Source: Penicillus capitatus (taxonomy: Eukaryota > Plantae > Chlorophyta). From it: 64,000 nt of DNA. A program made the position numbers and the translations under genes. Shown piece after piece: positions 1-37,840 of the stretch. The stretch is taken from assembly GCA_965649825.1 (NCBI GenBank), contig OZ287695.1, forward strand, positions 372,001 through 436,000, in the 5' to 3' direction. Position 1 is the stretch's first letter, and every line of letters begins with the position of its first letter. The notes below the pieces were generated by a model. That model had not been told where the DNA came from. It did no database searches and was given only the letters and a program-made list of their open reading frames with translations.

Positions 1-55
1 GCGACAGATATCGACGTCATCGCGTTTGTGCGTGCGATATGATATCAGCTAGAAC

Positions 56-3700: not shown

Positions 3701-5244
3701 CGACGGGCAACGGTGGTGTCTCGGATTCAATTGGAGGCTCCGGCGAAGGGGTCTCGACGGGCAGCAGCGGTATCTCGGATTCAATTGGAGGCTCCGGCGA
3801 AGGGGTCTCGACGGGCAGAGGTGGTGTCTTGGAGACAATTGGAGGCTCTGGCGGAGGGGTCTCGACGGGCAGAGGTGGTGTCTTGGAGACAATTGGAGGC
3901 TCTGGCAGAGGGGTCTCGACAGGAGGTGGTGTCGCTGGCGGTTCCTCTTTTTTGGGACATTTCTACAGAGAACAGCGACACATGTAAGGATTTCGCATTC
4001 GAAACAAAATCCTGAGATGTAGCCAAGTTGTAACCCAGAATGGAAATGTGAGATGGCATAGAGCACATGACCTACCTTGCATTTTTCGCAGAGAAATGGA
4101 TCTGACGGGAGGGGTGATGGCTTCTCCTTTATCTTGCACTCGCTTGGTGGAGTCTTGCCAGCCATCGTCTCCAGAATCCAGTCTCTGTAGTACGAGATGC
4201 TCGTCAGAACATTACAATCCCTGTAATAAGGAAGGTAAGGATCATAAGATGTGACACCGACCAACAGATCCTCGCCGGGATATCCCTTGCCGACATCGCA
4301 TGGTCCATCTGCCACCACAACAGGACCTCCGTCCAGACCTTGAAGCACACGAGCACTAAGGTTCAGCTTGGTGTTCTGCCTCACACCTGTTTTATCATTT
4401 TCATCTTTTCCGCAAAAGCAGAGCCAGCCATCTCTGGGGACGTCCCCACTCTGGCTTCGACATCGCCCTTTCCAAGCCGGGTAAAGCGACAGGTAGCTTT
4501 GCGTCCCACAGATGTCCGATCTGCCGCCGCCGATTTCCCATCCAGGCATCAGCATGTCCTTTTCTCCGTAGACCATCCCTCTTCGAAACAGCCTTGGCGT
4601 TTCCAGGTGTGCCGCTTTGTCAAGTTTGAGCATGGCCAGGTCGGAGCCTCTCTTTACGTTCCCCGTCCAGCCACTGTGGATGTAGGCGTCTTTAACGTGG
4701 AATCTCTGTCGCCGAACACAGCGGATTCGACCGCGGCGTCTCGCCTGCGACGACGGCTTACCTTCTTGGAGGACGTCGTGTTGATATGGTAGATCCCGCA
4801 GTACACCGTCGGGTAGCACCCGACTGAACCCTCGTGGTTCGGGTCGACGCAGTGCGCCGCCGTCAGGACCCATCGTTTGTTAACGAGTGTGGCCGTGCAC
4901 TCGTGGTTTCGGCTTCCGGCCAGTCGCAAACTGCATAGGTACGGAAATCTTCCTGGTGAACCTTCAATCCTGTGGCACAGCCCGTTCTCGTCGTCGGTCA
5001 CATCGCCACTCAACGGCGCGGAGATTTTCTCGTCTCCGTTCGAGATGAGCGAAAGGAACCCGTCGCGGCGGCCGAACCCTGGACAAAGCAGCGTTAGGGT
5101 TGACGGCAGGATGCCTTCGACGGCACCTGAACTGGCGAATGTTGGGCTCGGGCCACAGAGCAAAACGCAGAGCAGCAGAATCGAAAACGCATGGTCCTTT
5201 TTCTTGAGACAGCACGGCCCGAACAAACGCACGTGTTCAAGCAT
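768..5244 (-). CDS. Trypsin-ankyrin fusion copy 1: signal peptide, catalytically dead S1A domain, Pro/Glu linker, about 16 ankyrin exons, Cys cap; carries a 1-nt frameshift near 2660
   Basis: ATG 5244 MLEHVRLF...AFSILLLCVLLCGPSPTFA. Motifs WVLTAAHC and DLAMLKLD. Spliced DKT-GLDGGP replaces GDSGGP. Ankyrin exons end in phase-0 GT donors. Last exon ends ICTHVDVCTEQTKTELQDLLKP* (TGA 770-768). One ANK exon is 95 nt versus 96 nt in copy 2. Confidence 0.85.
3627..3935 (-). repeat. 54-bp coding tandem repeat (about 5.7 units) encoding ETPSPEPPIESETPPLPV in the linker of copy 1
   Basis: ggctc(c/t)ggc recurs at 3628, 3682, 3736, 3790, 3844 and 3898 (period 54 = 18 codons). The minus-strand frame between protease and first ankyrin reads as a Pro/Glu/Ser/Thr repeat. 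Confidence 0.9.
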
Positions 5245-5899
5245 GACTGCCTCGAGCAGCAAAACACTCGAATTTGAAAAGCGCCTATCAAGCGATCATT
5301 TGTACTCCGTTTCTATTTTCGCCATTTCAAACTTGAGGACAACGTTCTCTTCTGCCGCAGATTTATGCAGTAACCTTTGCGATGTCGATCGACTGCCAGA
5401 GAATCCCACGTTAAGGCGCTGCATGCATCTTTTTAGCGGGATTGGCAGCATTAGATTCGTGTCGATCCCGTATCTCCGCTCTGCGCTGCAGCTTCGCAAC
5501 CGTCCGAGCTGCTGCTGCGGAGAGTAGCCTGAAGCGATTGACAAGACGTAAGGACCTAACGGAGACACCTTACGTGTCTTTAGTGTAGCCGCATGCACGC
5601 TTGATACCTTGTCGACGCGAATCTTTGGAACGTCTCTACGTGGCTATGGGGCGATGCCGGCGAGCATGATACGGAGAAACCATCTTGGGATGCGCGGGAT
5701 CGACGTTGGAAGCAGAAAACCTGTGTGTCATCATTGACGCGACAGCAACGTACGGCAATCAACCAAAGAGAGCTTGTGGTCAAGACAACACTCCCAGCTA
5801 CAGACACTGTCTGAACACTCGTAGTCGCAGACACCGTCTCTCTACAATAGAAGGCAACGTGGGAGTCGGAGGAGAAGCGTCGTACACGTTTCAGGTTTC

Positions 5900-9300: not shown

Positions 9301-10614
9301 GTCAAATTGAGCGAAACTGACAAACCAGTAAACGCGTTCAGATGTTATCATTTCGGTTCTGTGTCAAAGGCCTACCTTTTACGACGTTTCGCATACGATT
9401 AGACTCGACATGCACGGCCGGTAACTTTAATCACCCATGTTTCTTCTTCTATGTATGCTTTTAGGTAGCATAGAACTTATTGACTGCTTGCTCTCTAGGT
9501 GGGAACTTTGAGAAACCAAAACAGAAACCCCGCACAACGACGCTGTTGGCATTGTTTGACGTTAGGACGTCAACGGGGTGCACGATGTGAACTTCATTCT
9601 CTGCGAAATGCACGTCCTCGAGATGGAGTCTTCGCATACAAACACCACTGTGGAATGTCCAATCCAATTCGCCATGTCGAAAAGAGCACAAAGAATAGCA
9701 TTATTCCTTCTGTTAACAGCTACGAAAACAAGCTACAGATCACACGTGGCGAGGCGACATCGAAATTGGACCTGCGATATTACACCGCAAGAAATGCAGA
9801 CCGGTAGAAGAAAACAAGAAGCACAGATGCACTGATTGGCCAGCCTAATCTGATAGGATCACACTCCTCCCTGTCTGAGTGATAATGTAATTTAGATGTT
9901 GTTAGGTGTGGGAATCATCACCATCATGTAATTCTATTTGTTTCAACTTTCAAGGGGATCGATTGTGATGGTCTAAGGCTTGGCCCTTCGACAAGCGACG
10001 CATATATACCCCTCCCAACTTAATAAAGCGTGCAAAGGACATGAGGAAAGGGTAATCCTCTTATTAAAAGAGAAGGCCAGGATCATTTGTCCTTCATCCT
10101 GGCACTATATATCGAGAAACAAAGCAGACTGCGCCTTTGATCTGAGCTATGAAAGATGCAGATCCCGACGCTGGTTTTAACGATAGTATTATTAATTTGA
10201 CTCGACAGTAAACTCGATGAGCGACGCAAGATGAACTGAGTCCGGAAACGCTGACGACAAAGAAGCATTTCGTCGTCTCCGCATTACGTTGAGGGACAAC
10301 TCCGTATGAAATACGGTGACGACGGCTTCGACGCAGGGGATGACGGAACAAAATAACTTGAGGACGACGCGTTTTGAGAACTACCCGTTGATGTGGCAGG
10401 ATAGTGTACAGGAGATGCGGGGTATCTCGTGCTTGACGCTTCGTGAAGAAATCACAGGAAGTGCTAAACAGCCAAAAGACAGTGACTGTTTTCGAGCGCG
10501 GCAACGACTACCAGAAGCAGATGATGTAACGGATGGCAACAAAAGAAACCTGGAGGCTGCTTCGTGCAATAGATCGTTCGCGTGTTTTCGTTCTCGACAT
10601 TCATCGCCGAATAA

Positions 10615-11123
10615 AAGTGCTGTCGTACCATCTCCAGTCACATCACTGCTCACAACTGAGACACCGCGTTAGAAAGCTCGTCTTCGAAAGGCGTCTCCAA
10701 ACGGCGCTCAAGATACGATGCGACTGTCAGCTGTGGTTCGTTGCGTGTTTCCTCGCGGCCGAGAAGAAGAGAAAAACAAGCCTTCAGGCGCGGCCCCATG
10801 CTCCTATCACACGGTCGGCATCTAGTATCAGTCTAGTAAGAAATCTCTTCGCCTTCATATAATCTGTGTTCGATAGGTTTGTCCGAAGAGCCGTTTGCAG
10901 AGAAGTAGTATCGGGCTGATGTGACGTCTGTTGCTCAATATACACAGCAGATGCTTGTCGAGAGGCGTCGCAGCGACATCGCGTATCGTCGGAAGCATCG
11001 AGATCGAGTCCCACGAAAAAGATTTAAAACTTCAATCTTTCCCACATTAAAATCCGAAGAATCATCAAAGGTCATACGATGTGTTAAGGATGTTGTCCAT
11101 CAATCAGATCTTGTGTTTAGCAA
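10615..11123. repeat. Duplicated 3' flank (paralogue of 56-562)
   Basis: Direct near-identical alignment to 56-562. Defines a tandem unit of about 10.5 kb for copies 1 and 2. Confidence 0.9.
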
Positions 11124-11289
11124 AAACGTGAGACATGCAACTCTCGTGACAGTTGCGTGCTCAGCTTGAATAGAGCATGAATGATCCAGACAGGTCCTTT
11201 CGGCAAAGACAGCTTTCCGATCAAAAAAGTGTAAAGAATTAGCGGAACCATTCAGCTTGCCTCTGAACAAAAACGAAAATCTAAGATCG

Positions 11290-14200
11290 TTACGTTCTCC
11301 CAGGAACGAATGGTTTTATCTTCAAGAGTTCTGCGAGATCATCCCGAACTTTTTTCGCGCATGCCTCTTTCTGGCAGATAACTTTGTAAGGAGTATCTCC
11401 CTTTTTGTTCTCGATTATCTTAATCCTCTTTTCCGGTGCCGCTTTCTCCAGCAGCGTCTATAGAGGTAGTTATGATCAAGCCGAGTGATTGAGATTCGGC
11501 TCACCTTAGCAGCCTTGCGTTGTCCGTGACGAGCGGCATAATGAAGTGCAGTGTTACCGTTGCGGTCAACGGCGTCGACCTCCGCTCCGTGGGCGATGAG
11601 TATCTTAGAAAACAGACATCGATGCAGACAGCGTCTAAAAATTCGGATCGCACTTCAATCATCCTCTCATTTCCTTCTTCGGCGGCCAGCATAAGGGGCC
11701 TCTTTCCAATTCTCTTCATTCCGAACTCGATATCGGCTCCATGTTCCAGCAAGGCCTACATTGTCCCACTGCGCGAGAAACCTCAGCGATTGTTACTGGC
11801 ATACCTCCAGTGCAGGGCCGGAGTTCTGATCTGTTGCAACGCAGAGAGGAGATCGCCCTTTCTCATCGGGCTCGTCAATTTTTGCTCCTTTGTGGAGAAG
11901 TGCCTTCGAACATCGACCGTCAGAAAGGACCAGAAAAACGACACTGGCCTACTTCAATAATATTGACCCTTCCTCTTCGAGCCGCAAGGTGAAGTGCTGT
12001 ATCTTTCGTTTCAGTTCTTAGTTTTGGATCGGCGCCATTTTTGAGGAGAAACTGCACGTCGAATGAGTCTTCGCCTCTGCTTGGATAAACATACCTTTAC
12101 AATCTTACAGTTTTCGGTTTCGACGGCAATGTGCAGCGCGTTCATTCCATATCCATTCCAAGACTTGGTATCTGCTCCTTTCTCAACAAGAACCTTCAAA
12201 GCACTTGTCCGTCAGAAGCATTTGAAACGGATGTCATCCTCACCTCGACAATCTCTGCGAATTCGCCTTTTACGGCTGCGTGCAGAGCAGTGTTATCCGA
12301 TGTGTCGACGATGTTGACATCTGCTCCAGCATCGATGAATATCTGTGGTGGGCAGTCGTCAGATCAGAAACGCAGAATGAGATAGGTGGTACCATAACAA
12401 TATAGGTGAAGTTCTTCTCAGCTGCAAGGTGGAGGGCGGTCTTATGCTCAGCGTCGAATGTGTTGACGTCAGAGTCTGCTGCAATGAGAATCTTCAAATG
12501 TTAGAGGATTAGCCAGAATCACAATTGAAGCAGGATGTACCGATACAATTTTGGCGTTTCCTAGTTCAGTTGCGGTATAGAGTGGCGTCTTTCCATCCAA
12601 AGAGGTCGCATTCACACTTGCGTTACCTTCGATGAGTGCCTACAATCAAGTATCGTAAGCTACAAACTGAGGTTAATTATGTCATCCGCACTATGACAGT
12701 TTCAATATATCCCTTCTCCACTGCGATGTGAAGTGGGGTCTGTTGTTTGTCGTTGATATAGTAATCAACGGCTGCGTGCGCTTGGATAAGCATCTTCGAA
12801 CAATAACCATCAGCACGCAGTCTATGACGAAGTGTCATTTACCGTTGCAATCTCTGTGTGGCCCTCTTCCAAGGCAATAAGAAGAGGCGTTCGCTTGTCA
12901 ACTACAGCATTCACTTTGGCGCCGCTTTCAATAAGCAACTGCAAACCAATGACAGTCGGACCAGAAAGGAGTGATGTGTTCTGGTGCTCACTTTTGTAAT
13001 ATCTGGGTACTTCTTTTCAACTGCGATGTGGAGAACGGTCCAGCCTGTGGCGCTGGGAATATTAACATCGGCATTGGCTGCTATGAGATCCTGTATCGGC
13101 ATCAATTTGGATCAAGGATTCGAAACAAGACAGGGTCTCACCGTTGCGATCTCTGTGTATCCCATCTCAACTGCGGCAAAGAGTGGTGTTTTTCCATCGA
13201 CGATTTCATCCACATCAACGCCGTGCTTGATCATTTTCTTGAACAACAGAAAGTCGAGACAGAAACTCAAACGAAATCTGTCTCACCAATACGAGTGCCC
13301 TGGATCCCTTTAAAACGGCATCGTAGAAGAGTGATCTTCCCTCACCGGCGACAGTCACATTAGCCCCCTCTTCGACGAGGTACTTCGAAGAGACAAAAGC
13401 CGTTTCGGAAAATGGATGCAAACATTGCCGGTACTTCTGCGATCATTGTCTGATTTGTGTCCCATGCAAGCTGCAGAGGTGTTTTCCCGGCACCGGGGGC
13501 ATTGATATCAGCTTTGTTCTCAACGAGAGTCTATGCAGCGCTCATGGTGAACAGGTTTGTCTGTTTCTGGCACACCTTTGTTATTCCGACGAACTTCCCC
13601 ATCACCGCTTCGTGCAGTGCCGTCTTTCCGTTGTTGGCAGGAATATTCAGATCAGCATTCACATCGATGAGAGCCTGTATCGCAACACGTCGAGATCGGA
13701 TATCTGCAGAGGATCGAATTCGGAGTTACTGTCAGGGATGACGTGATGTTCTTCATCGCGGACAGGTAAACAGATGTGCGTCCTTCAGCGTCGACACGGT
13801 TTACATCGGCGCCTCTGTTTGCAAGAACCTGGAAACAACATCGATAATCGAGATCGTGAAGCATGATGTCAATCCGCAGCGCCGCTGCACAAGTATTACC
13901 CCTATGCTTTTTGTTGCCTCGTGGACGGTAGCCCAAAACATCAGCGTTGATTTGTCAGCAAGGCCGCCTGTCGTCAACTCTGTGTTGCTGAGAAGAGTAT
14001 TGGGGTTCAGACTGTTTTGAAGAACCCATAGGACCATGTCAATGTTGTCCTCATTGATTGCCAGTATTATAGTCTAACATCCAATAAGATAAATCGATGG
14101 TGCAGACAGTGACATTTCTCACGTTGTATAGTTTTTTTGGAGGATAAACCGGCCTAGCCGGCAAAACAGGTGATGGCGTCGGCGAAGTCTCAGACGTAGC

Positions 14201-15598
14201 ATCCGACGTTGATGTTTTCTTAGGTGGAGTCTTCTTGTGTGGAGGAGGCGTCTTAGGAGGAGTCTTCTTAGGTGAAGGCGTCGCTGGCGGCTCATACTTT
14301 TCTTTGGGACACTTCTACAGAAAACAACGCGCGTATGAGCATTCGCATCCAAAACAGTATTTTGACAGGTGGTTGAGCCAGCAACCAGGATAGAGATGTG
14401 TGATGTGACAGATAGCACAGGACCTACCTCGCATTTTTCGCAGAGATGTGGATCAGATGGGAGTGGCGGCCACTCTTTCACGTTGCACTTGCTCGGCGGA
14501 GTCTTGCCAGCCATCGTCTTCAGAATCCAGTCCCTGTAGTACGCGACGCTGGTTTGAATCGAACACTCTCCGTATCCCTGAGGCTCGGGATCGAATGACG
14601 TGACGCCGACCACCAGATCCTCGCTGGGAGTCCCCTCTCCAACAGCGCACGGCACATCGGCCAACACAAGGGGACCCCCGTCCAGACCTTAAAGCACACG
14701 AGGATAGAGAGATGGCCGGTTTGGATGTCCCACCCTCCCACCTGTCTTCTGCTCAGCCTCTTCCCCGCAGAAGCAGAGCCAGCCGTTTCCCGGGACTTCC
14801 TTGCCCTTGCCTCGACACTCTCTGCGCGGAGACCGGTGCATCGACAGGTAGCTCTGATATCCGCAGCTGTTCGAACTGCCGTCGCCGATTTCCCATCCAG
14901 GCGTCAGCATGTCCTTCTTTCCCAGAACCATTCCATTCCGAAACAGCCGTGGCGTCTTCAGACGCGCCGCCTTGTCAAGTTTGAGCATGGCCAGATCAGA
15001 GCCTCTGGAGACGTTCCCCGTCCAGCCTCTGTGGATGTAGGCATCTTCGACGTGGAATCTCTGTCGCCCAACGAAGCCAGATCAGCCACAGCGTTTCGTC
15101 CGTGATGGCTCACTTTCTTCTCAGTGGTCGTGTTGACCTGATAGATGCCGCAGTACACAGTCGGGTAGCAGCCGACGGAGTCTTCGAAGTTCGGGTCGAC
15201 GCAGTGCGCCGCCGTCAGGACCCATCGCTCGCCGACGAGTGTGGCTGTGCACTCGTGCTTCCGGGTACCGGCCATTCGCAGACTGCATAGGTACGGAAAT
15301 CTTCCCGGAGAACCTTCAACTCTGTGACACAGCCCGTTCTCGTCGTCGGTCACATCGCCGCGCGACGCCGTCGAGATTTCCCCGTCGCCGTAGGAAACGA
15401 GCGAAACGAATCCGCCTCGACGGCCAAACTCTAGACAGAAGCAGTCTTAGGGTCAACCGGCATGATACCATCGATGGCACCTGAACTGGCGAATGTCGGG
15501 CTGGGCGCACACAGAAACGCGCAAAGAAACAGAATCGCAAACGCGCGACCCTTTTTCTTCGGACGGCAGGACGCGACTGAACGAACATGTTCAAGCAT
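11290..15598 (-). CDS. Trypsin-ankyrin fusion copy 2: signal peptide, dead S1A domain (GLDGGP), Lys/Pro/Thr linker, ankyrin array, Cys cap
   Basis: ATG 15598 MLEHVRSVASCRPKKKGRAFAILFLCAFLCAPSPTFA. WVLTAAHC. Spliced EQKT-GLDGGP. The ANK exons checked are in frame. Ends VICQKEACAKKVRDDLAELLKIKPFVPGRT* (TAA 11292-11290). Confidence 0.88.
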
Positions 15599-16109
15599 GA
15601 CTGCCTCGAGCAGCAAAACACTTGAATCTGAAAAACCCATGTCAAGTGTTCTTTTGTAGTCCGTTTAATTTTGGTTCTAAGCTAGCAACATTTTGCCGCA
15701 TGTTCATGTAGTACACACACTCCTGCGTGATGATTTATCGTCGCAGAATCCCACGTGAACTCCCAGCGTTAGCGTGCTTACCCCGATGGCAGCATCGGAT
15801 TCGTTCCGCTGGCGTATTTGCGCGCGATGCTGCATCTTTTGCAACCGTATTCCGCGAGATGGTGCGTCGTCGTGAAGATAATGATGCTCTAAATTGTACG
15901 AGTGTTCCTACTGAAATGACAGATCGTTTTTTGACTAGCTTTTTCTTTCGTCGACTCGTCTTTTGGATTTGAAATAAGATCTTCCTTAGTCTTTTGTCTT
16001 AAAATCGCGATTCTGATCACAAAACCATGCGCCGCCACATCGTTTTCGACTGTCGGCGATTCTCTTGTGCTCAGATCTGGCAAATTGTATGACGCCCACG
16101 ACGTAAGGC

Positions 16110-18962: not shown

Positions 18963-21900
18963 TCATGGAGTCAGCAGTTTGATAAGGTCCCTCCGAGTCT
19001 TTTCGGAACAATGAGCATCCGGATTAGAACAAACGTATGCGAGAGGAGTTTTTCCTTTGTCGGTCAAGCTCAACCTCGATGCTCCAGCACCAACGAGGAT
19101 CTAGATAGAGTCACCTGCTAGGCAGCGAGGCATTCCGGCTTACTTCAGCAACGTTCAGATGACCGCTATATGATGCCAGATGAAGAGGTGTCCAAGCGGC
19201 ACTTGTCTTGGCGTCCAAATCGGCGCCAGCTGCGATCAGCACCTGCGACCGTCCATCATAGAGCTGATCGATCGCTGCAGAGACCGGACCTTTGCGATGT
19301 CGGTGTAACCGTATTGTAATGTCGTATGCAAGGGAGTGTGACCGGTGTTCGACGAGGCATTCACATCGGCACCGGCTGCGATCAGCACCTGCGACCGTCC
19401 ATCATAAAAGCTGATCAATTGCTGCAAGGACCGTGACCTTTGCGATGTCGATGTGACCGTATGCTGATGCCATGTTCAAGGGAGTGTGACCCTTGTCTAT
19501 CTTGGCGTTCACATCGGCGCCGGCTGCGATCAGCACCTGCGACCGTCCATCATAGAAGCTGATCAATCGATGCAGAGACCGGACCTTTGCGATGTCGATG
19601 TGACCGTATTGTGATGTCGCATGCAAGGGAGTCCAGCCAGTGTTCGACGTGGCGTTCACATCGGCACCGGCTGAGATCAGCACCTGCGACCGTCCATCAT
19701 AGAGCTGATCGATCGCTGCAGAGACCGGGACCTTTGCGATGTCGATGTGACCGTATTGTGATGTCGCATGCAAGGGAGTCCAGCCAGTGTTCGACGTGGC
19801 GTTCACCTTGGAACCGGCTTCAATCAGCACCTGCGACCGTCCATCGTAGAGCTGATCGATCGCTGCAGAGACCGGACCTTCGCGATGTCGGTGTAACCGT
19901 ATTGTGATGTCGTATGCAAGGGAGTGTGACCGGTGTTCGACGGGGTGTTCACATCGGCACCGGCTGCGATCAGCACCTGCGACCGTCCATCATAAAAGCT
20001 GATCAATTGCTGCAAGGACCGTGACCTTTGCGATGTCGATGTGACCGTATGCTGATGCCATGTTCAAGGGAGTGTGACCCTTGTCTATCTTGGCGTTCAC
20101 ATCGGCGCCGGCTGCGATCAGCACCTGCGACCGTCCATCATAGAAGCTGATCAATCGATGCAGAGACCGGACCTTTGCGATGTCGGTGTAACCGTATTGT
20201 GATGTCGTATGCAAGGGAGTCCAGCCAGTGTTCGACGTGGCGTTTACATCGGCACCGGCTGCGATCAGCACCTGCGACCGTCCATCATAGAAGCTGATCG
20301 ATTGCTGCAAGGACCGGGACCTTTGCGATGTCGATGTGACCGTATGCTGATGCCATGTGCAAGGGGGTCGAGCCAATGTTCGTCCTGGCATCCACATCGG
20401 CGCCGGCTTCGATTAACACCTACAGTATCTCTTCGACAAGAACAGATTATCGGTCTTATCGCTCACTTTGACAACTTCGAGATGTCCTTGGCGCGATGCT
20501 ATATAGAGAGAAGACCAGCTTTCTTTGTTGGTGGCACTAATGTCAGCTCCAGCTGCGATAAGAACCTTCTCCATTCCTTTCCAGCGACATAAAATGCTCT
20601 TTGGGGACGCACTTTGACGACTTCTGAGTGTCCGTGGTAGGATGCAATGTGGAGCGGAGTATCTCCTTTGACGTTCTTGATGTCGGTGTCCGCTTTGTAC
20701 TTCAACAACACCTGAAAGCACAGACAGACAGCTGGATGGATTGCATGCAAGCACAGCGTTCTGGACATCTTCTGATGCACTGATTTGTTCATTGCACCTC
20801 TGCGCATTTTGATGCGTCGAATGCTGCAGCCAAGTGCAGCGATGTCGATCCCTCTAGCATCTCATATTCCGGTGTGCTCATATCATGACCGTAGGTCGTG
20901 TCGACATCCAAACCGGCTAAAAGAAGCGCTTCTGCATCGAGTGCACTGTCCCCTCGAATGGCGACGACCATCTTCTGCAAAGACAAGATGCATTCGAACT
21001 CTCGTAAGCTAATGAGCTTACGGTGAGCATCTCTGAGTGAGTCATCTTGGCGTGATGTGTGCGTTTTTCGTCGAATCTCTTCGCCCCTCGCTTCTTGCGA
21101 CTTCGACGCTGCATGCACTCCGTATTCAGCAGTCCATAGATGTGTTTGCTTCAGATCACACCTTTTTCGTGCGATCGCTGCCGGTGATGCTTTCTATCCA
21201 GTCCAGAAAGTGGTCGACAGATGTGTAAACGGCTGGTTCTAAGCCGGAGCACTGTTGGGACTCGTCGTCCGCGTAGCCGTACGACGTGATGCCAACGATC
21301 ATGTCTCTTTTTGCATTCCCAGCAGCGATCTTGTCGTTCGGAGCGTCCACCAACATCAGAGGACCGCCGGAGTCGCCTAGCAGACAATCGCAACGACTCA
21401 CCCTCGGATCAGTTAAAGTCCATTGCCAGGGCACTGACCTTGACATGTGTCCTGTAAAAGCGCTCCGGCGCAGATCCAGCTGTCCTCGTCGACTCCTTGA
21501 GGTTGCTCTTTGCATGATTTACGCGCGACAACGGCAATTCTGTCAGCCAAGCGCAAAACGTGTGAGTGATCCGCGGATTCTGTACGTCCCCATCCTGTTG
21601 CAGCCAACAGCTTTCCGCGCCTCAGTGGAACGTCCCCCGAGCCCAAACGCGGCAGTGTAAGGTTGGCCGCCTCTCTGTCGAGCTTCAGCACTGCAATGTC
21701 AGATCCGTTGATGACATCGCCTGTCCAGTCGTTATGGATATGGCCATCAATGACATCGAACACCTGCATGTCACACGGCGTTCGTTCGACCTGATTGAAG
21801 AGAAGTGTAGAATCAAATCACTCACTTTGTCCTCGTCCACCTTGTCCTTCAGGTCATAGATTCCGCAGTAGACGACGGGGGACATACCCAGGGTTTTTTC

Positions 21901-22318
21901 TCCTTCGGGGTCCACGCAGTGAGCCGCCGTCAAAATCCATTGCGGCTTGATAAGCGTCGCCCCGCAGGCATGCGAATGGCTTCCGCGTTCACGCATGCTG
22001 CACATGTACGGAAATCTTCCACGCTTCGCTTTTGCGCCTCCCTGTAGCACACGGCTCAGATAATGACGGTTGAGATGCTTCCGCGTCGATAGACGCACCA
22101 CTATCTTCGCGTAGATGTCGTTGGACGCCTCGCGCCATCCTTGTCCTAGAAACGCGTCAAATGGACGGATAATGGGAACTACGCTCACCCGTTTCCTGGC
22201 TGCCGTGAGTTGGCCACGACAGCAGGAGTAGCCACAAGTGTATTGCTAGGTGCGTCATTTCTGCCGCCTTTCTTTCCGGGCGTCGACGTCCCTTTTCTGA
22301 ACAACGGTGCTCGAGCAT
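18963..22318 (-). CDS. Trypsin-ankyrin fusion, predicted active protease, about 12 ankyrin exons plus Cys cap
   Basis: MLEHRC...MTHLAIHLWLLLLSWPTHGS signal. Spliced AK-IVGG activation site. WILTAAHC, DIAVLKLD, spliced QDTCQ-GDSGGP. Ends YVCSNPDAHCSEKTRRDLIKLLTP* (TGA 18965-18963). Alternative start at 22258. Confidence 0.9.
19234..20420 (-). repeat. Tandem exon+intron units of about 147 bp (99-nt ankyrin exon plus about 48-nt intron) with a 588-bp higher-order duplication
   Basis: gatcagcacctgcgaccgtccatc (or a close variant) recurs at 19234, 19380, 19528, 19675, 19822, 19968, 20116 and 20263. Units at 19380/19968 and 19528/20116 are near-identical, introns included (offset 588). Confidence 0.92.
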
Positions 22319-22400: not shown

Positions 22401-23395
22401 TTGGAAGTACGGGTCGTTCGAGTCAAATGCAGCACGAGCAACACCCGAGTCGTCAGTGCAAAGCTGCTCGACGGCGACGTCGTTGGTCTGCCCTTTCTCC
22501 GTTCCCGTGGATTCACTTACACACCGAGCCAGTACGTCTTCATCCGCTGCCCTCAGATTTCCCGATTCGAGTGGTACCCGTTCTCGCCGATGTCAAGTCC
22601 CGGAGACTGCTATCTCGGCGTCCACGTGCGCAAGGCTGGCGACTGGACGGCGGCGTTGCATCAACTGGTGGAGGAACACGCTCGCAGGAGGACTGGATCC
22701 TGTTCGGAGAACAGCGGGACGTTCTCTGTGTGCTCGAGATACCACGTCAAGCCTGTGCTCGACGAGTTCAACGTCGTCAAGCGATTCAATTTCAGCATCT
22801 CTGTGGATGGGCTTATCGGCGCCCCGCGCAGAACTATGCTCCCGATTGCAAGGTCATTGTGCTCATCGGCGCCGGAATCGGCGTCGCTCCTTTCGCATCG
22901 GTCCTCACCGATCTGCTCGATTCGCTCAAACAGTGCGCCTGTCCGAAGTGCGGCTACAGCAATCCGCACCTGATGCGCACCCGTATCAAGAAGGTCTACT
23001 TCTACTGGACAGTGCGATCGCGATCCGAAGCATCCTGGTTCAAGCATCTCCTGGAGGCCATCTCGTTGCGCGATGAAGACAGTCTGCTGGACATCCACGT
23101 GAACATCACTGGTATCAAGCGCGCCGATGACCCCAGGACGATGATGCTGCGCCTCGCGCAGTACGAAAGCGGCGAGCCTTCGACATCGGACGCCCATTCC
23201 CGCACCGTCACGCGCTTTGGCCGCATAGACTGGAACGAAGTTTTTGAGAAGGTCAAAGTCGACTTCCCGTGCGAACCGAGTGTGGGAGTTTTCTACTGTG
23301 GTCCCAATACAATCGCAAAGATCCTCGACAAAATGTGCCGACAGAACAGCAGAGGGCCGACAAAATTTCTGTTCATGAAAGAGTCGTTTGGGTAG
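22401..23395 (+). pseudogene. RBOH: 5'-truncated, frameshifted NADPH oxidase (RBOH/NOX) FAD- and NADPH-binding fragment
   Basis: FTYTPSQYVFIRCPQISRFEWYPFS..SSPGD..LGVHVRKAGDWT, then a frameshift at about 22827 into AQNY..VIVLIGAGIGVAPFAS...KKVYFYW...GVFYCGP...KESFG*. No transmembrane heme domain upstream. No introns. Confidence 0.88.
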
Positions 23396-27998: not shown

Positions 27999-30900
27999 TT
28001 AGGTCATTTTGTGCGTAGGGAATTCGTTCTTCAAGTACCTCTTGATTTCTTTCGCAGCGACACGCGTACACTTACGGTTGCGTTCTGCGGCTGTGCACAC
28101 GATATCGCGAGGGAGCTTGTCCTCTGCGTTCTTCATCGTCCTGGACGCCCCGCCCTCCTCGATAAGGATCTGTCACATCATTCGCATCGTCAGAGCCCAG
28201 ATTCAGAATGCAGACCGTGTACCTGAACAGCTCTCTCGTTGCCGTACTTTGCGGCGTAATGAAGTGCGGTCATCTGATCGCTGTCGACGGCGTCCACTTC
28301 TGCCTCTTTCTCGATGAGACTCTTCACGGGCAATCATCTGCATCGTGCTGCACAGAGGTCGAGGCTTACTCTTATGATCGAGTCAGATCCCCCGATAGCC
28401 GCCAGCATCAGCGCCGTCTTATGCTTCAGATCTTCGGCATTGACATTCGCACCACGTTCGACGACCACCTGTCGGTTTCGCAAATACAACGACGGTTGCG
28501 AACGGCTCAGCATACGTACGTGTACAACGGATCTGTGATCACTGTTGGCCGCGACGAGAAGAGCGGTCCTTCCATCGGAATTGGCCTCTTCGATGCCTGC
28601 CCCGTATTTGAGAAGGACCTTCAGGAATGGCCGTCGTCATTTTGCAGTCTGGAGACGGAAACAGCTTCACCTCTACGAGATGAGCAGAGCCATGGCGCGC
28701 TGCGTAGTGAATAGGGGCTCCCCAATAGCACTGGGCATTCACGTCTGCTCCGTATTTCAAGAGCAGCTACACGTTTCCATAGCCCAAAGCGTTTTGGCGT
28801 GCCGCTGGTCGTACCTCTGCTATGTCGACGTATCCCTCGTCGGATGCAATATGAAGTGGCGTCTGTTTGTCCTCGTTGGCGACATCCACCGTGGCTCCCG
28901 CCTCTATGAGTTCCTTCGAGGGGAGTTCGTCAATTCAGAAGCTCCGACAATGGCTGGCTATCTTACTCTTGCGATCTCCGCTCTTCCGTTAAATGCCGCA
29001 ATGTGGAGTGCCGTTTCTTCCCTGTAGTCCGCAGCGTCGAGGGAAACACCGCTCTGGATGAGCGCCTTCAGACAACGACATCATCTATCGGGCCCTTCAG
29101 AACGTCAGCCAGACGCACCGTCACATCCAGTTTCTGTCCAGTAAACGCAGCCATATGAAGTGCCGTCTGTTTCTTGGAACTGGCAGCATTGACGTCGGCA
29201 CCTGACTTAAGCAATAACTACAAGCATCGACAGTCAGTTGTCCCTTCCAGCACATCCGTTGATCGTACGAAGATGATTGCGGATCTTCTTCTTCTGATCG
29301 CGTGATGCAGTGCCGTATAGCGTCTTCTGTCCGTCGCATCGATGGAGATCCCTTGCCGAATAAGCGCCTTCGAACAACGATAGCCCATTCGCATGTCTTA
29401 GTGCGTCTCGGGGATACCTCTACGGAGTCAATCTGTCCTTCGTCTACTGCGATGTGAAGCGCCGTCTGTTTCTTGGAATCGCTGGCGTTGATGTCGGCTC
29501 CTGCCTTGACGAGTTTCTGCAACGGATCGCCACTTATGCATTTCGGTTTTCAGAACATTCAGTGTTCTCACTCTGATGATCGCGACGTTCCCCATAGCGG
29601 CGGCAATGTGCAGTGCCGTCCAACCGTCGGCATTGCCAGCGTTGATCGAAGCGCCTGCACTGGCGAGCACCTTCAATGAAGCGCCGCCATTTACGAACGC
29701 GTACCGAGTGCATTTGCCTCACCTCTATGGCATCCGTCTGTCCGTTTGCTACAGCAAGGTGCAATGCTGCCTGTCCGTCGTTGTCCAAGGCATCGATTTC
29801 CGCTCCCTTGGCGATGACAGCCTGCCGAGAACACTCTTCGATGGACATGCACGCAGGACAAGCACTTGACGCACTTTCATGGTCTTTGTGTGCCCTCCTG
29901 CCGTTGCAACGTGAAGCGCCGTCTGACCGTGAGCATTGACGCTCTCGATTGGTGCCCCCAAAAGCAAGAGTGCCTTTAGCAACCCCGTCATCAGTGGTTG
30001 GGAAGTCTGAACGTGTGTCGGCCGCACCTTCACCGTCTTAGTCTCTCCGTTCGCTGCTGCCAAGTGCAGGGCTGTCTGTCCATCGCTATCGAGCGGGTCG
30101 ATCGTCGCTCCTCCGTCGACGAGTTCCTGCATTGCACCGTCTTAAGTTCACTAGCATTCCATACCCGCACAGATCTCGCCTCCATCGTCTTTATGTGTCC
30201 GCTAGCTGCCGCCACGTGAAGCGCCGTCTGGCCCTGAGCGTTGAAGCTGTCGATTGGTGCGCCCAAACGAATGAGCTCCTGGAAGGTCACATCATCTGTA
30301 CATAAGAGAGTCCTTGTGCTTGTCGAACGCACCCTCATCGTCTCGATATGTCCATTTGCCGCTGCCAAGTGCAATGCTGTCTGTCCGTCACCATCAAGCG
30401 CATTGATCGTCGCCCCTCTGTTAATGAGCTCCTTCAAATGACCGTCTTGCCTTCACGACCTCCCAAGGAGAGTAACGGCTCTCACTGTCGTGGTCTCTGT
30501 GTGTCCGTTCGCTGCCGCAACGTGGAGTGTTGTCTGTCCATGAGTATTGACACTGTCGATCGGTGCCCCAGCAGCAATGAGCTCCTTCAAGGGTCGCCCG
30601 TGGGCCAAACGCCAAATGTGAGTAACGGAGGCACCTTCACGGCATCCGTTTGTCCATCTGCTGCTGCGAGGTGCAATGCCGTCTGTCCATCACCATCGAA
30701 AGCCTCGATCTTCACGCCTTGCCCGAAGAGCACCTTGGATGAACCACCACTGACCCGCCATCACACGACACGAGCATCGCTAGCACCTTCATCGTCTTTG
30801 TATGCCCGTTGGCCGCTGCGACGTGAAGCGCCGTCTGACCCTGAACGTTGACGCTGTTGATCGGAGCCCCAGCGCCAACGAGCTCCTTAAAGGTATAGCC

Positions 30901-33504
30901 ATCAGGACGTAGAAATGCGGATGGTGTGTCTAACGCACCTTTAGGGCATCGGTTTGTCCATTCGCTGCTGCGAGGTGCAGGGATGTCTGTCCATCGCCAT
31001 CGAGAGCATTGATCCTCGCCCCTTTATCGATGAGCACCTGCAGGTGCCGCCTTGAGCACACGATTCTCAGAGCAGCGACGGTCTCACTCTCATCGTCTCT
31101 GTGTGTCCGTTTGCTGCGGCAACGTGAAGTGGCGTCTGATAACGAGCGTTGTTGCCGTCGATCGGTGCCCCCACACGAACGAGCTCCTTCAAAGTCACAT
31201 CATCCGTTTGTGAGATCTGCGAGATGATCATCTGTCCTACGCTTGTCATGTGCGTCTGTCCACTTTCAACAGCAATGTGCAAAGCCATCTGTCCGGCAGC
31301 GTTCAGGGCATCGATCACCGCGCCAGCGTCGATGAGTTTCTGCAGGAAAGCGCCGTTCGTTGATGACATCAAAGAGACATGGGCGCGACCAGTGCGATTT
31401 CGACGTTGCTCTTTTCCACCGCGATATGCAGCGGCATGTTTCCGCCACTCGCTGCGTTGACATCAGCTTCGTTGTCGATCAGCACCTGCAGGCATGTGTA
31501 CGGAACACAGAATTTGCCAAGGCCTCTTGGATATACCTTGGCTATTTCGTCGAACTCTTTCTGCACTGCCGCAAACAGTGGCGTCGATCCGTCGTTGCTG
31601 GCAATGTCTAGGTTCGCACGGAAACGGATGAGAACCTGCGAAAGGGCGTGTTGCCTGAAGAGAGGAACAGACGTCATTCATTCTGAGTTACTTTGGCGGC
31701 GTCGATTCCATTCGTCGCCGCAGCGATGTACAGACTTGTGTGTCCACTGGAGTCGGCAGCATCGACATCAGCACCGTTCTCCAGAAGAATCTAGACGCAA
31801 TACAGCGAGGGCAAGGAATGAGCAGGTCGGCGGAAGATGGCTGGACTGTTGTCGGTGTTACCTGCATGATCTTCAGCGCTTTGCTGATAACGGCGTAGTG
31901 AAGCAGCGTCGCGCCAGAGGCGAGATTGGCACTTGATGCCGTCTCTCTGTGGTGGAGCTCGACGTCGGCGCTCAAGCCCTGTTCTAAGACCAAGAGGGCG
32001 GTGTCAGGATCATGGTCCCTGATGGCAACGATCATTTTCTGAGGGGCAGCGAAAGAACTTGGAGATGGCATAGCGCTGGTGTTTGCGTACATTGTACTTT
32101 GACTCTGGCGATGGAGGCGGGGGAGATGGGGAAGGAGCCGGCTGTTGCGATGTCGAAGGAACTTCCGAGGGGAAAGAAGGTTTCTTCTTTGTTGTCTTTG
32201 TCTTCTTCTCACACGTCTAGAGTAACAGACATGCATACAGTCGACATTGGCCATCGAAAACGCGTAGAGTCCTGGCAGGTGGTTGAGCCAGCAACCAGGA
32301 TAGAGATGTGAGATGGTGGATAGCACAGGACCCACCTCGCATTTTTCGCAGAGATGTGGATCAGATGGGAGCGGCAGCCACTCTTTCACGTTGCACTTGC
32401 TCGGCGGAGTCTTGCCAGCCATCGTCTTCAGAATCCAATCCCTGTAGTACGCGACGCTGGTTTGAATCGAACACTCTCCGTATCCCTGAGGCTCGGGATC
32501 GAATGACGTGACGCCGACCACCAGATCCTCGCTGGGAGTCCCCTCTCCAACAGCGCACGGCACATCGGCCAACACAAGGGGACCCCCGTCCAGACCTTAG
32601 AGCACACGAGCGCTGAGGTTCAGCTGGGCGTCCCACCCTCCCACCTGTCTTCTGCTTAGCCTCTTCCCCGCAGAAACAGAGCCAGCCGTTTCCGGGGACT
32701 TCCTTGCCCTTGCCTCGACACTCTCTGCGCGGAGACCGGTGCATCGACAGGTAGCTCTGATATCCGCAGCTGTTCGAACTGCCGTCGCCGATTTCCCATC
32801 CAGGCGTCAGCATGTCCTTCTTTCCCAGAACCATTCCATTCCGAAACAGCCGTGGCGTCTTCAGACGCGCCGCCTTGTCAAGTTTGAGCATGGCCAGATC
32901 AGAGCCTCTGGAGACGTTCCCCGTCCAGCCTCTGTGGATGTAGGCATCTTCGACGTGGAATCTCTGTCGCCCAACGAGGCCGAATCAGCGACAGCGTTTC
33001 GTCCGTGATGGCTCACTTTCTTCTCAGTGGTCGTGTTGACCTGATAGATGCCGCAGTACACAGTCGGGTAGCAGCCGACGGAGCCTTCGAAGTTCGGGTC
33101 GACGCAGTGCGCCGCCGTCAGGACCCATCGCTCGCCCACGAGTGCGGCTGTGCACTCGTGCTTCCGGGTACCGGCCATTCGCAGACTGCATAGGTACGGA
33201 AATCTTCCCGGAGAACCTTCAACTCTGTGACACAGCCCGTTCTCGCCGTCGGTCACATCGCCGCGCGACGCCGTCGAGATTTCCCCGTCGCCGTAGGAAA
33301 CGAGCGAAACGAATCCGCCTCGACGGCCAAACTCTAGACAGAAGCAGTCTTAGGGTCAACCGGCATGATACCATCGATGGCACCTGAACTGGCGAATGTC
33401 GGGCTAGGCGAATACAGCAACGCGCAAAGCAATAGAATCGCAAACGCGCGACTACTTTTCTTGAGACGGCACATTCTACTTGAAAAAACGTATGATGCAA
33501 ACAT
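27999..33504 (-). CDS. Trypsin-ankyrin fusion copy 3: dead S1A domain (GLDGGP) with the longest ankyrin array (about two dozen exons)
   Basis: ATG 33504 MFASYVFSSRMCRLKKSSRAFAILLLCALLYSPSPTFA. WVLTAAHC. Spliced KQKT-GLDGGP. Linker SQQPAPSPSPPPPSPE. Ankyrin exons from about 32.0 to 28.2 kb. Ends IVCTAAERNRKCTRVAAKEIKRYLKNEFPTHKMT* (TAA 28001-27999). Confidence 0.87.
29700..31350 (-). repeat. Alternating A/B ankyrin exon array in copy 3
   Basis: Exons alternate between a ..ID/NALDGDGQTALHLAAANG.. type and a GAPID/N..NA.GQTALHVAA..GH type, at about 150-nt spacing (about 300-nt dimer period). Confidence 0.8.
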
Positions 33505-35107: not shown

Positions 35108-35620
35108 CACTCTTGCCACTGTCCCGCCGCCAAGATGTCGATTATCGAGGGACCGATGATGACGGTCCTTATCCCAATCTTAAATTTCAGCTGTTTTCCT
35201 CTTGGCCAGCACTGTCCGAAACATAACGCACGAGGGCCTCTCGGCGGCGGCGGCGCCGCCGCCATTCTCGCCGATCTTGACAGAGCATAGGCGAGATACC
35301 CAGGCAGGTACGGTGTGAGATGCTTGGTCGTCGCGTCGGGGGGCTATGTTTCGCGGGAGGTTGTTCCTGGGAACGTTTTCTCAGCGAAACGCTTCGTTTC
35401 TTACAAACAAAGCAACAGATCTGCGAAAGGTCTTAACCACAAATGCCGCCGTTCGGCTGATAGACACCGTCCGTCGTGTTCGTGTCAAAGATCGATCGCC
35501 TTGGACGAAACAAACAAATAGCAGCTGAATGCTATGCCTCGCTACACACGATAGCCCATCTGTCCCATCAACAGACAGATCGGTCGCTATGGCGCACAGG
35601 ACAGAGGCAGAACGAAGCAA

Positions 35621-36157: not shown

Positions 36158-36234
36158 GAAGTCCGCGGTTCCTGGCACGTGTGCCGAGGGGCGTGAGGCA
36201 GGCACGGACCCACGGGTCGATTCTTCGTCTCCCT

Positions 36235-37692: not shown

Positions 37693-37840
37693 GGTGCCGC
37701 GCTCGGGGACGTCGAATGGCAACGAACAAGGCGGGTGGTAAAGATGCGTCTCGGCAAAGATGCGTTCGTTATGTGATGATGATGACAATGTCCGAAGTAC
37801 ATGCGTCAACGGTGGTGCGTGGGTGGGTGTATTGATAGCC
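37693..37840. promoter_or_regulatory. Short divergent intergenic region, bestrophin / kinesin
   Basis: 148 nt between the head-to-head start codons at 37692(-) and 37841(+). Confidence 0.55.

What the first reader, a model, noticed from the sequence alone, without database searches (positions are those of the whole stretch)
19234..20420. One ankyrin per phase-0 exon, with very recent exon-unit duplication creating a combinatorial repeat array
Seen: across the family each ankyrin is a 96-105 nt exon bounded by phase-0 introns. Here eight 146-148 bp exon+intron units are near-identical even in the introns, with a 588-bp higher-order duplication. Variation concentrates in a few positions: SNTG[H/W]TPLH[T/A]T[L/S]QYG versus IDKGHTPLNMASAYG. 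Known: the brown alga Ectocarpus has ROCO-LRR and NB-ARC-TPR genes with one repeat per exon that diversify by exon shuffling and are proposed as immune receptors. Inference: a convergent ankyrin-based diversification mechanism, possibly also using exon skipping.
Basis: partly seen in the sequence, partly recalled or inferred. Interest (0 to 1): 0.82.

Follow-up and report, generated by a model that had tools for sequence, protein, structure and literature searches.

The report
Ankyrin exon-cassette array, algal protease gene
A siphonous green seaweed gene for a secreted trypsin-like protease ends in ankyrin repeats that each sit on their own 99-base exon, and eight of these exon-plus-mini-intron modules were copied in tandem very recently, showing how such a binding domain grows and varies.

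Summary
Window 19243-20419 (minus strand) contains eight tandem units of 146-148 bp. Each unit is a 99-nt phase-0 ankyrin exon plus a 47-49-nt GT..AG intron. A 588-bp four-unit duplication is 93.8% identical.

The array is the middle of an 18-exon gene (22258-18963, 806 aa). The gene encodes a signal peptide, an S1A trypsin-like protease with an intact His/Asp/Ser triad, about 13 ankyrin repeats and a two-cysteine C-terminal cap. The window is a cluster of 7-8 such genes holding about 70 one-repeat exons. It comes from a bryopsidalean green alga whose closest named relative is Caulerpa lentillifera.

The array arose by duplication within the gene, not by exon exchange between genes. In a related alga, two 99%-identical contigs differ by one 147-bp unit in a paralogous array. 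Bryopsis homologues also have one repeat per 99-nt exon, but with phase-1 introns at a different codon, so the arrays were built independently.

Diversifying selection is suggested but unproven: pN/pS is about 1 overall and higher at canonical binding positions. Nothing supports an immune-receptor role or exon skipping, and splice sites score as normal. This is a new variant of known repeat-cassette systems.

The parts
18963..22258 (-). Whole gene A: 18 exons, 2421-nt CDS, 806 aa. Order of parts: signal peptide, pro-region, trypsin (S1A) domain, basic linker, ankyrin repeats, Cys-Cys C-terminal cap.
   Evidence: The spliced model is open from ATG to stop and all 17 introns are GT..AG. Pfam gives Trypsin at 2.3e-38 and Ank_2 at 3.8e-122.
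22189..22258 (-). Exon 1: start codon and hydrophobic N-terminus MTHLAIHLWLLLLSWPTHG, which looks like a signal peptide.
   Evidence: Full-length homologues have similar hydrophobic N-termini. No signal-peptide predictor was available.
21162..22145 (-). Exons 2-4: trypsin-like protease domain. It carries TAAHC (His), DIAVLKL (Asp), GDSGGP (Ser), an Asp at the S1 pocket (QDTCQGDSGGP) and an R|VLQGG activation-site-like motif.
   Evidence: H99, D152 and S241 are invariant in 24 homologues. Intron positions and phases match the Bryopsis homologue.
21022..21108 (-). Exon 5: polybasic linker RRSRKKRGAKRFDEKR... that joins the protease to the ankyrin part through introns 4 and 5.
   Evidence: Phase-compatible GT..AG introns. 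The fusion is inferred from the family architecture.
20467..20974 (-). Exon 6 (N-terminal cap region, 20798-20974) and single-copy ankyrin exons E7 (20613-20711) and E8 (20467-20565).
   Evidence: These exons are only 55-58% identical to other exons.
19243..20419 (-). The array: eight exon-plus-intron units U1-U8. Exons are at 20321-20419, 20173-20271, 20026-20124, 19878-19976, 19732-19830, 19585-19683, 19438-19536 and 19290-19388. Each exon is followed by a 47-49-nt intron.
19814..20421 (-). Higher-order copy 1 (units U1-U4) of the 588-bp duplication.
   Evidence: Self-blastn gives 93.8% over 610 bp.
19226..19832 (-). Higher-order copy 2 (units U5-U8) of the 588-bp duplication.
   Evidence: U2-U4 vs U6-U8 differ at 11 of 441 nt.
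18963..19242 (-). Diverged last full repeat U9 (19144-19242), a 43-nt intron, and the terminal exon (18963-19100) with the conserved cap ...GKTPLAYVCSNPDAHCSEKTRRDLIKLLTP*.
   Evidence: The two Cys are invariant in 24 homologues. This part is 79-82% identical to the 3' ends of paralogues at 56029-56449 and 59137-59568.

Best explanation
The array is the recently expanded middle of the ankyrin-repeat domain of a secreted, probably active, trypsin-like (S1A) serine protease. The gene belongs to a tandemly clustered, fast-turning-over family in bryopsidalean green algae.

Shown: each ankyrin repeat is a self-contained cassette of a 99-nt phase-0 exon plus a 47-49-nt intron. Any gain, loss or swap of whole cassettes therefore keeps both the reading frame and the splice signals.

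Inferred: the cassettes multiply and are partly homogenised by unequal homologous recombination and gene conversion between neighbouring units. Exact repeats of up to 238 nt provide the substrate. A block of four units was duplicated most recently.

Inferred, weaker: the ankyrin domain is the module that chooses the protease's target or partner. Differences between units fall mainly on the canonical ankyrin binding face (the hairpin tip and first helix), so changes in cassette number and type probably change what the protease binds.

Speculation: a role in defence or wound response of the giant cell.
For: Anatomy:
- An in-frame 18-exon model with all introns GT..AG.
- Pfam Trypsin plus Ank hits.
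- A catalytic triad and a C-terminal Cys pair that are invariant in 24 homologues.

The intervening segments are introns:
- 43 of 52 cannot be translated through.
- In an older paralogue pair, exons are 75.0% identical and introns 63.8%.
- In Bryopsis sp. [quoted passage not shown]
- A 2044-nt Logan contig carries trypsin, ankyrin repeats and cap as one uninterrupted ORF, consistent with an mRNA.
- Caulerpa lentillifera g5190.t1 shows a read-through 42-nt V...Q insert at the same K|x position.

Duplication within the gene:
- Array exons are 83-100% identical to each other and at most 63% identical to exons of other genes.
- Introns are identical or nearly identical between units.
- Exact repeats reach 238 nt.
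- Exon heads, exon tails (GYTD vs GHID) and intron types occur in different combinations.

The process is ongoing in the family:
- L003 and L004 are 99% identical yet carry 3.4 vs 4.4 copies of a different 147-bp cassette.
- Older two-unit periodicity is visible in the gene at 28229-31790.
- Internal near-duplicates occur in P0012 and P0045.

Independent rebuilding of arrays: ankyrin introns are phase 0 at K|VL here but phase 1 inside the Gly codon of KAG|AD in Bryopsis, while the trypsin-domain introns coincide in position and phase.

Binding-face variation:
- pN/pS is about 0.9-1.2 over whole exons among most U2-U8 pairs.
- pN is 0.25-0.54 at six positions chosen beforehand, against 0.02-0.17 at the other 27 codons and pS of 0.13-0.23.
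- Variable positions track family-wide variable positions (rho 0.43, p 0.012).
Against: - No transcript or read data exist for this organism. Splicing, the trypsin-ankyrin fusion across introns 4 and 5, and the copy number all rest on sequence logic and homologues.
- Without intron 4 the protease would stop at 21159, and an ankyrin-only protein could start at a downstream ATG.
- The selection signal is weak: short sequences, non-independent pairs, recombination, and 5 of 6 predefined sites variable with Fisher p = 0.10.
- Variation on non-framework positions is also what relaxed constraint would give.
- The relative's array is nearly invariant between copies, so duplication by itself need not be adaptive.
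- Ankyrin repeats behind a signal peptide are unusual.
- No ligand or substrate is known.
Confidence: 0.65

Rival explanations
1. Neutral churn. The cassette structure makes the array prone to unequal recombination. Units come and go without functional consequence, and the differences between units reflect relaxed constraint on non-framework residues rather than selection for new specificities.
For: Whole-exon pN/pS is about 1, and pS (0.17-0.23) is similar to intron divergence (0.12-0.16). The copy-number variant in the relative involves almost identical units. Enrichment at the predefined binding sites is not significant (p = 0.10).
Against: pN at the six predefined binding positions is 1.5-3 times pS, while the other codons are below pS. 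All nine array exons keep open frames and normal-scoring splice sites despite up to 24% divergence. The architecture is conserved across Bryopsidales.
Confidence: 0.3
2. One reading: an immune-receptor-like system, convergent with Ectocarpus ROCO-LRR and NB-ARC-TPR genes, in which cassettes are shuffled and exon skipping adds combinatorial isoforms.
For: The same formal architecture: one repeat per exon, equal length, the same phase, tandem gene clusters. All array exons are symmetric 0-0, so any skip stays in frame. The family shows birth-and-death turnover between species.
Against: There is no signalling module; the partner domain is a secreted protease. No exon sharing between genes is seen. 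Array donor and acceptor scores are ordinary for the family. There is no expression or isoform data, and no link to pathogens.
Confidence: 0.15
3. Two separate genes or a dead gene. A trypsin-only gene ends at 21159, and an independent, possibly decaying, ankyrin-only gene carries the array.
For: A stop codon follows directly if intron 4 is not spliced, and ATG codons exist in exons 5 and 6. The window holds fragments of the family, such as the partial trypsin at 55466-54985 and a 3'-end remnant at 59137-59568.
Against: At least 24 homologues, including annotated Bryopsis models and an uninterrupted transcript-like contig, carry both domains. Seven further trypsin domains in the window are followed by ankyrin exons on the same strand. 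Introns 4 and 5 are phase-compatible. The array contains no stop or splice-site loss.
Confidence: 0.1
4. Assembly artefact: the array, or its copy number, was created by misassembly of a shorter repeat.
For: Tandem repeats with 238-nt exact stretches are hard for short-read assemblers. No reads were available.
Against: Units differ at 5-24 of 99 exon positions in a consistent, frame-preserving pattern. The same kind of array is seen in independent assemblies of other algae.
Confidence: 0.05

Closest known systems
Ectocarpus and brown-algal ROCO-LRR and NB-ARC-TPR genes with one repeat per exon (Zambounis et al. 2012, PMC3341825; Teng et al. 2024, PMC11378527)
   Same: Each repeat is one exon of fixed length (72 nt there, 99 nt here) in a symmetric phase. 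Genes are often tandemly duplicated. Repeat exons duplicate recently. Variable residues are proposed to lie on the binding face.
   Different: The repeat type is ankyrin, not LRR or TPR. The partner domain is a secreted S1A protease, not a GTPase or NB-ARC module. Introns are about 48 nt. No exon exchange between loci and no intronic or antisense relic exons were found. Alternative splicing is not shown. The host is a green alga.
Fungal NLR ANK, TPR and WD repeat domains with high internal repeat conservation (Dyrka et al. 2014, PMC4986451)
   Same: Near-identical tandem ankyrin repeats: 87% amino-acid identity over 132 residues between the two higher-order copies. Repeat-number polymorphism is seen here in a relative's paralogue. 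Variation falls on the inner helix and hairpin. A concerted-evolution mosaic is present.
   Different: Fungal repeats lie in continuous ORFs attached to NACHT or NB-ARC domains. Here every repeat is a separate exon with its own mini-intron, attached to a protease. Positive selection is demonstrated in the fungi and only suggested here.
Vertebrate ankyrin genes (ANK1/2/3), in which many repeats are single 99-bp exons (own knowledge, not checked here)
   Same: One 33-residue repeat per 99-nt exon, consistent with growth by exon duplication.
   Different: Those are ancient, diverged repeats with long introns. They show no near-identical cassettes, no mini-introns and no clustered gene family.
Animal S1A proteases with added recognition domains, such as matriptase/ST14 and Der p 3, the best solved-structure matches
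   Same: A chymotrypsin fold with His/Asp/Ser, an Asp in the S1 pocket and a zymogen-type activation motif. E-values against PDB are 1e-23 to 1e-22.
   Different: No solved or named relative found here has a C-terminal ankyrin array. The trypsin-plus-ankyrin combination was found mainly in Bryopsidales (Bryopsis, Caulerpa, unnamed contigs) and in a few unplaced sequences.

Membership tests
Ankyrin repeat proteins (Pfam PF00023 / PF12796) | Profile match above the curated cut-off with 33-residue periodicity | tested here: met
   Ank_2 scores 399.6 bits against a cut-off of 27.3. Ank scores 326.2 bits with 11 stretches. Array exons are 33 codons each.
S1A (chymotrypsin-fold) serine peptidases (PF00089) | Profile match plus the His/Asp/Ser catalytic triad | tested here: met
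   Trypsin scores 132.6 bits against a cut-off of 20.6. TAAHC, DIAVLKL and GDSGGP are present. H99, D152 and S241 are invariant in 24 homologues. Activity itself was not tested.
Exon-per-repeat shuffling genes of the Ectocarpus type | Each repeat encoded by one exon of constant length in a symmetric phase | tested here: met
   The eight array exons and three flanking ankyrin exons of gene A are all 99 nt and phase 0-0. The window holds about 70 such exons.
Exon-per-repeat shuffling genes of the Ectocarpus type | Exchange of repeat exons between loci, or relic or antisense repeat exons in introns | tested here: not met
   The best match of any array exon to an exon of another gene is at most 63% identity, against 83-100% within the array. 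Introns are only 44-66 nt and hold no relic exons.
Exon-per-repeat shuffling genes of the Ectocarpus type | Repeat domain attached to a signalling module (ROC-COR or NB-ARC) | tested here: not met
   Pfam finds only Trypsin and Ank families.
Exon-per-repeat shuffling genes of the Ectocarpus type | Alternative splicing of repeat exons | not testable with these tools
   No transcripts of this organism were available. Splice-site scores are ordinary for the family.
Repeat domains with high internal conservation (fungal NLR type) | At least 85% identity over at least 100 residues between repeats | tested here: met
   U1-U4 vs U5-U8 differ at 17 of 132 residues (87% identical). U2-U4 vs U6-U8 differ at 7 of 99 (93% identical). 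Counts come from the translations.
Repeat domains with high internal conservation (fungal NLR type) | Repeat-number polymorphism between alleles | tested here: inconclusive
   Not testable for this array. It is shown for a paralogous array in a related alga: 3.4 vs 4.4 copies on two 99%-identical contigs.
Repeat domains with high internal conservation (fungal NLR type) | Positive selection at binding-face positions | tested here: inconclusive
   pN is 0.25-0.54 at six predefined sites against pS of 0.13-0.23. The data set is small, the pairs are non-independent and recombination is present. Fisher p = 0.10.
Repeat domains with high internal conservation (fungal NLR type) | NOD (NACHT or NB-ARC) domain upstream of the repeats | tested here: not met

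The most novel reading that the evidence does not exclude
Siphonous green algae may have a protease-coupled, ankyrin-based variable recognition system. It would consist of clustered genes for secreted trypsin-like enzymes (some with the catalytic Ser replaced) whose ankyrin exon cassettes are duplicated, converted and perhaps alternatively spliced. This would generate many binding specificities against microbes, or for self/non-self discrimination when the cytoplasm of these giant single cells is wounded or extruded. If so, it would be a third independent invention of cassette-based receptor diversification, after brown-algal LRR/TPR exons and fungal NLR repeats, and the first to be tied to an extracellular protease.
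Probability: 0.18. Interest if true: 0.8.

Novelty: new variant of a known kind. Interest (0 to 1): 0.6.

Why it matters
This is a clean natural example of how a repeat protein can be built for evolvability. Because every 33-residue ankyrin repeat carries its own mini-intron in phase 0, whole repeats can be added, lost or swapped by ordinary recombination without breaking the gene.

The family is large, clustered and turning over quickly in Bryopsidales. In the papers searched, including the Bryopsis and Halimeda genome papers, it is not described.

Ankyrin introns sit in different places and phases in Bryopsis and in this alga, while the protease introns coincide. This indicates that the arrays were rebuilt independently by cassette duplication.

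The family also gives a testable candidate for target-directed extracellular proteolysis in giant coenocytic algae, whose wound and defence biology is poorly understood at the gene level.

Tried and rejected
- Continuous 49-residue repeat without introns. Rejected: unit lengths of 146 and 148 shift the frame, the longest ORFs through the array are 135-142 aa, and 43 of 52 family spacers cannot be read through.
- Exon shuffling between genes. Rejected for this window.
- Weak splice sites as a hint of exon skipping. Not found.
- Self-hit or orthologue of the array gene in the protein database. None: the best identity is about 42% for the full protein and 55% for the protease part. The source genome is therefore not in the collection, and the array could not be compared between strains.
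- JGI metagenome scans with the protease domain and with the exact 23-nt junction. Nothing found.
- Structure prediction of the spliced protein. Variable sites were mapped onto canonical ankyrin positions from general knowledge instead.
- Literature searches for a description of trypsin-ankyrin genes or ankyrin expansions in Bryopsis, Caulerpa, Halimeda or Bryopsidales. Nothing found.
- Searches for papers on one-ankyrin-per-exon structure. They gave only an unreadable reference, Paladin et al. 2020.
Full report
**1. The observation**

Tandem Repeats Finder reports one array at 19209-20421 with period 147, 8.2 copies and score 1629. The same array also appears at periods 295 and 441. A self-comparison of the window gives 19226-19832 against 19814-20421 at 93.8% identity over 610 bp, an offset of 588 bp or four units. 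Offsets of one, two and three units give 85-87%.

The reading strand is the minus strand. There the array resolves into eight units of 148, 147, 148, 146, 147, 147, 148 and 146 bp. Each unit is a 99-nt open segment encoding one ankyrin repeat, followed by 49, 48, 49, 47, 48, 48, 49 or 47 nt that begin with GT and end with AG.

- Units 3 and 7 are identical throughout.
- Units 2 and 6 have identical introns and 5 exon differences.
- Units 4 and 8 differ at 5 exon and 1 intron positions.
- Units 1 and 5 differ at 20 exon and 4 intron positions.

The longest exact repeat is 238 nt at offset 588. The 23-nt intron/exon junction occurs eight times, against none expected in shuffled sequence.

**2. 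The short spacers are introns, and this holds family-wide**

I scanned both strands for AG|open frame|GT segments and scored them with a small profile. This finds about 70 ankyrin exons, mostly exactly 99 nt with some of 96, 102 or 105 nt, spaced about 150 nt apart.

The 52 spacers between successive exons are 44-66 nt. Of these, 43 have a length that is not a multiple of three or contain an in-frame stop. Continuous translation through the array is impossible, and the longest ORFs there are 135-142 aa.

In an older duplicated gene pair (1586-3491 vs 12118-14024) the exons are 75.0% identical and the spacers 63.8%. That is the pattern expected of coding and non-coding sequence.

**3. What gene this is**

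Joining the exons gives an 18-exon model from 22258 to 18963 with a 2421-nt open CDS of 806 aa and GT..AG at all 17 introns. Pfam finds a Trypsin domain (residues 58-299, E 2.3e-38) followed by ankyrin repeats (Ank_2 E 3.8e-122, 11 Ank stretches). The parts are:

- **N-terminus:** MTHLAIHLWLLLLSWPTHG looks like a signal peptide. No predictor was available, but homologues have similar N-termini.
- **Protease:** it carries TAAHC, DIAVLKL and GDSGGP, an Asp at the S1 pocket, and an R|VLQGG motif in the place of the R|IVGG activation site.
- **Closest solved relatives:** animal S1A enzymes such as Der p 3 and matriptase.
- **C-terminus:** after U9 comes a terminal exon with a cap containing two Cys.

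In an alignment of 24 homologues the catalytic His, Asp and Ser and both cap Cys are invariant.

The link between protease and ankyrin parts across introns 4 and 5 is inferred. Without splicing, the protease would end at a stop at 21159. The fusion is supported by three things:

- Seven further trypsin domains in the window are each followed by ankyrin exons on the same strand.
- At least ten annotated Bryopsis sp. KO-2023 proteins carry both domains.
- A 2044-nt Logan contig from SRR6256312 carries protease, repeats and cap in one uninterrupted ORF, as an mRNA would.

**4. Whose genome**

A single-exon bestrophin gene in the window (36235-37944) gives these identities:

| Hit | Identity |
|---|---|
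| Unnamed ENA metagenome-assembly contig | 92% |
| Caulerpa lentillifera | 59% |
| Bryopsis sp. KO-2023 and Ostreobium quekettii | about 50% |

The source is therefore a bryopsidalean (siphonous, coenocytic) green alga nearer to Caulerpa than to Bryopsis. Its own proteins are not in the database.

**5. How the array arose**

Array exons are 83-100% identical to one another but at most 63% identical to any ankyrin exon of another gene in the window. Typical repeats within other genes are 45-80% identical. The array is therefore an amplification within the gene, not an import of exons from other genes.

The units are mosaics. Three exon "heads" occur (W type, H type, IDKGH type), two "tails" (GYTD, GHID) and three intron types, and they appear in different combinations. 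This pattern is what unequal crossing-over and gene conversion between neighbouring units would leave. Exact stretches of 79-238 nt are ample substrate for that.

The most recent event copied a block. U2-U4 and U6-U8 differ at 11 of 441 nt. By comparison, gene paralogues differ by about 20%, and syntenic DNA of the 92% relative differs by about 15%.

**6. Independent support from relatives**

- **Copy-number difference.** In the related alga (ENA ERZ26696514), two contigs that are 99% identical over about 21 kb are syntenic with window 35362-46744 at 83-86%. They differ by exactly one unit in a different trypsin-ankyrin gene. L003 has 3.4 copies and L004 has 4.4 copies of a 147-bp cassette (a 99-nt exon ILIDANADVDTFDANHRTALYIAVEKEYTEIIN plus an identical 48-nt intron). 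Cassette gain or loss is thus current in the family. Whether the two contigs are haplotypes, strains or nuclei cannot be told.
- **Same layout elsewhere.** Another metagenome contig (L001) shows the same trypsin-then-ankyrin-exon layout with exons ending K|V.
- **Caulerpa.** g5190.t1 contains a 14-residue V...Q insert between two repeats at the same K|x position. This looks like a 42-nt intron read through by the annotator.
- **Bryopsis.** In P0047, eight successive ankyrin exons are exactly 99 nt (one further exon is 102 nt) with introns of 112-640 nt. These introns are phase 1 inside the Gly codon of ...KAG|AD..., 17 nt away from the phase-0 K|VL site used here. In contrast, the two protease-domain introns compared coincide in position and phase in both species. 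The simplest reading is that the arrays in the two lineages were each grown by copying a different founder cassette.

**7. Are the differences between units selected?**

Over whole exons, pN/pS among most U2-U8 pairs is about 0.9-1.2 (full range 0.38-1.66). pS is 0.17-0.23 between unit types, close to the intron divergence of 0.12-0.16. There is thus no net purifying selection, in contrast with the older paralogues.

I split the codons using the six positions randomised in designed ankyrin proteins (own knowledge; exon positions 12, 14, 15, 17, 25 and 26). The result is pN of 0.25-0.54 there, against 0.02-0.17 at the other 27 codons.

The array's variable positions correlate with family-wide variable positions (rho 0.43, p 0.012). 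Five of the six predefined sites vary, against 12 of 27 others (p = 0.10).

This fits diversification of the binding face. However, the sequences are short, the pairs are not independent and recombination is evident. Relaxed constraint is not excluded.

**8. Exon skipping and the immune-receptor idea**

All array exons are symmetric 0-0, so skipping would stay in frame. That is a property, not evidence. Scored with a matrix built from the family's other introns, array donors fall at the 42nd-77th percentile and acceptors at the 95th. Nothing marks them as weak.

The domain partner is a secreted protease, not a NOD or ROCO module. The Ectocarpus comparison is accurate as cited: a 72-nt exon per LRR, phase 0, exon shuffling, and later evidence of alternative splicing. 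It is an analogy of gene architecture only.

The closest analogue for near-identical ankyrin repeats with length polymorphism and binding-face variation is the fungal NLR repeat domains. Those lack introns between repeats.

**9. Verdict**

The structure is real and well explained as a cassette-built ankyrin domain of a clustered trypsin-ankyrin family in Bryopsidales, expanding by unequal recombination. The functional reading, variable target recognition for a secreted protease, is plausible but inferred. Defence or isoform diversity is speculation. I found no description of this family in the papers searched.

I rate it a new variant of a known kind, with interest 0.6.

Noticed in passing
window 900-64000; trypsin parts at about 4953-4067(-), 15305-14524(-), 22258-21162(-), 33208-32432(-), 50421-51258(+), 55466-54985(-), 58552-57538(-), 62209-63033(+): The whole window is a tandem cluster of 7-8 trypsin-ankyrin genes with segmental duplications. 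Examples are 52-5319 vs 10609-15672 at about 80% and 14363-15568 vs 32273-33471 at 96%. At least one copy is truncated (55466-54985, no Ser motif found), and there is a 3'-end remnant at 59137-59568.
   Followed up: partly
window 4339, 14688, 32596 (minus strand); L003 15257: Three paralogues, and the related alga's gene that carries the copy-number variant, have GLDGGP in place of GDSGGP. The catalytic Ser is replaced by Asp while the His motif TAAHC is kept. The change is conserved across species, so this looks like a maintained pseudo-protease or altered-mechanism subgroup.
   Followed up: partly
L002 12836-15827 (Bryopsis sp. KO-2023, BSYQ01000004.1): Bryopsis homologues also have one ankyrin repeat per 99-nt exon. 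Their introns are 112-640 nt and phase 1 inside a Gly codon, 17 nt from the phase-0 site used in the window. The protease-domain introns coincide in position and phase.
   Followed up: yes
window 3627-3920: A 54-nt tandem repeat (5.4 copies, 94% matches) lies between the protease and ankyrin parts of the first gene. Read on the minus strand it gives a Pro-rich 18-residue unit (PIESETPPLPVETPSPEP), probably a variable linker.
   Followed up: no
window 47693-47937: A 25-nt tandem repeat (GTTTGCTGCCTACGTTGCGCCTGCT, 9.8 copies, 97% matches) of unknown meaning.
   Followed up: no
window 22401-23395 (+): ORFs resembling the FAD- and NAD-binding part of a ferric-reductase or NADPH-oxidase-type protein lie head-to-head with the 5' end of the array gene. 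No membrane part is evident upstream, so this may be a truncated gene. The identification is from motifs by eye only.
   Followed up: no
P0045 (Caulerpa lentillifera g5190.t1): The public model contains VYIFARVHLVVVIQ between two ankyrin repeats. That is 42 nt starting GT. and ending CAG, which looks like an unspliced mini-intron left in the annotation.
   Followed up: partly
gene A residues 785 and 792 (window about 18990-19020) and alignment A1: A C-terminal cap motif (G.TP...(V/I)C......C.......LL.P) with two invariant cysteines is conserved in 24 trypsin-ankyrin homologues. It may form a disulfide, which would fit a secreted protein.
   Followed up: partly
The protease domain's best named and solved matches are animal S1A enzymes. 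Trypsin-plus-ankyrin proteins are also annotated in the nematode Aphelenchoides bicaudatus (P0002, P0004, P0026). The origin of S1A trypsins in these green algae (old inheritance, transfer or contamination of the nematode assembly) is unresolved.
   Followed up: no
window 36235-37944 (-) and 39156-40082 (+): A single-exon bestrophin homologue, used here to place the organism, and a kinesin-like ORF. The region 35362-46744 is syntenic with a related alga's contig at 83-86% DNA identity, whereas the trypsin-ankyrin genes next to it are not one-to-one.
   Followed up: partly
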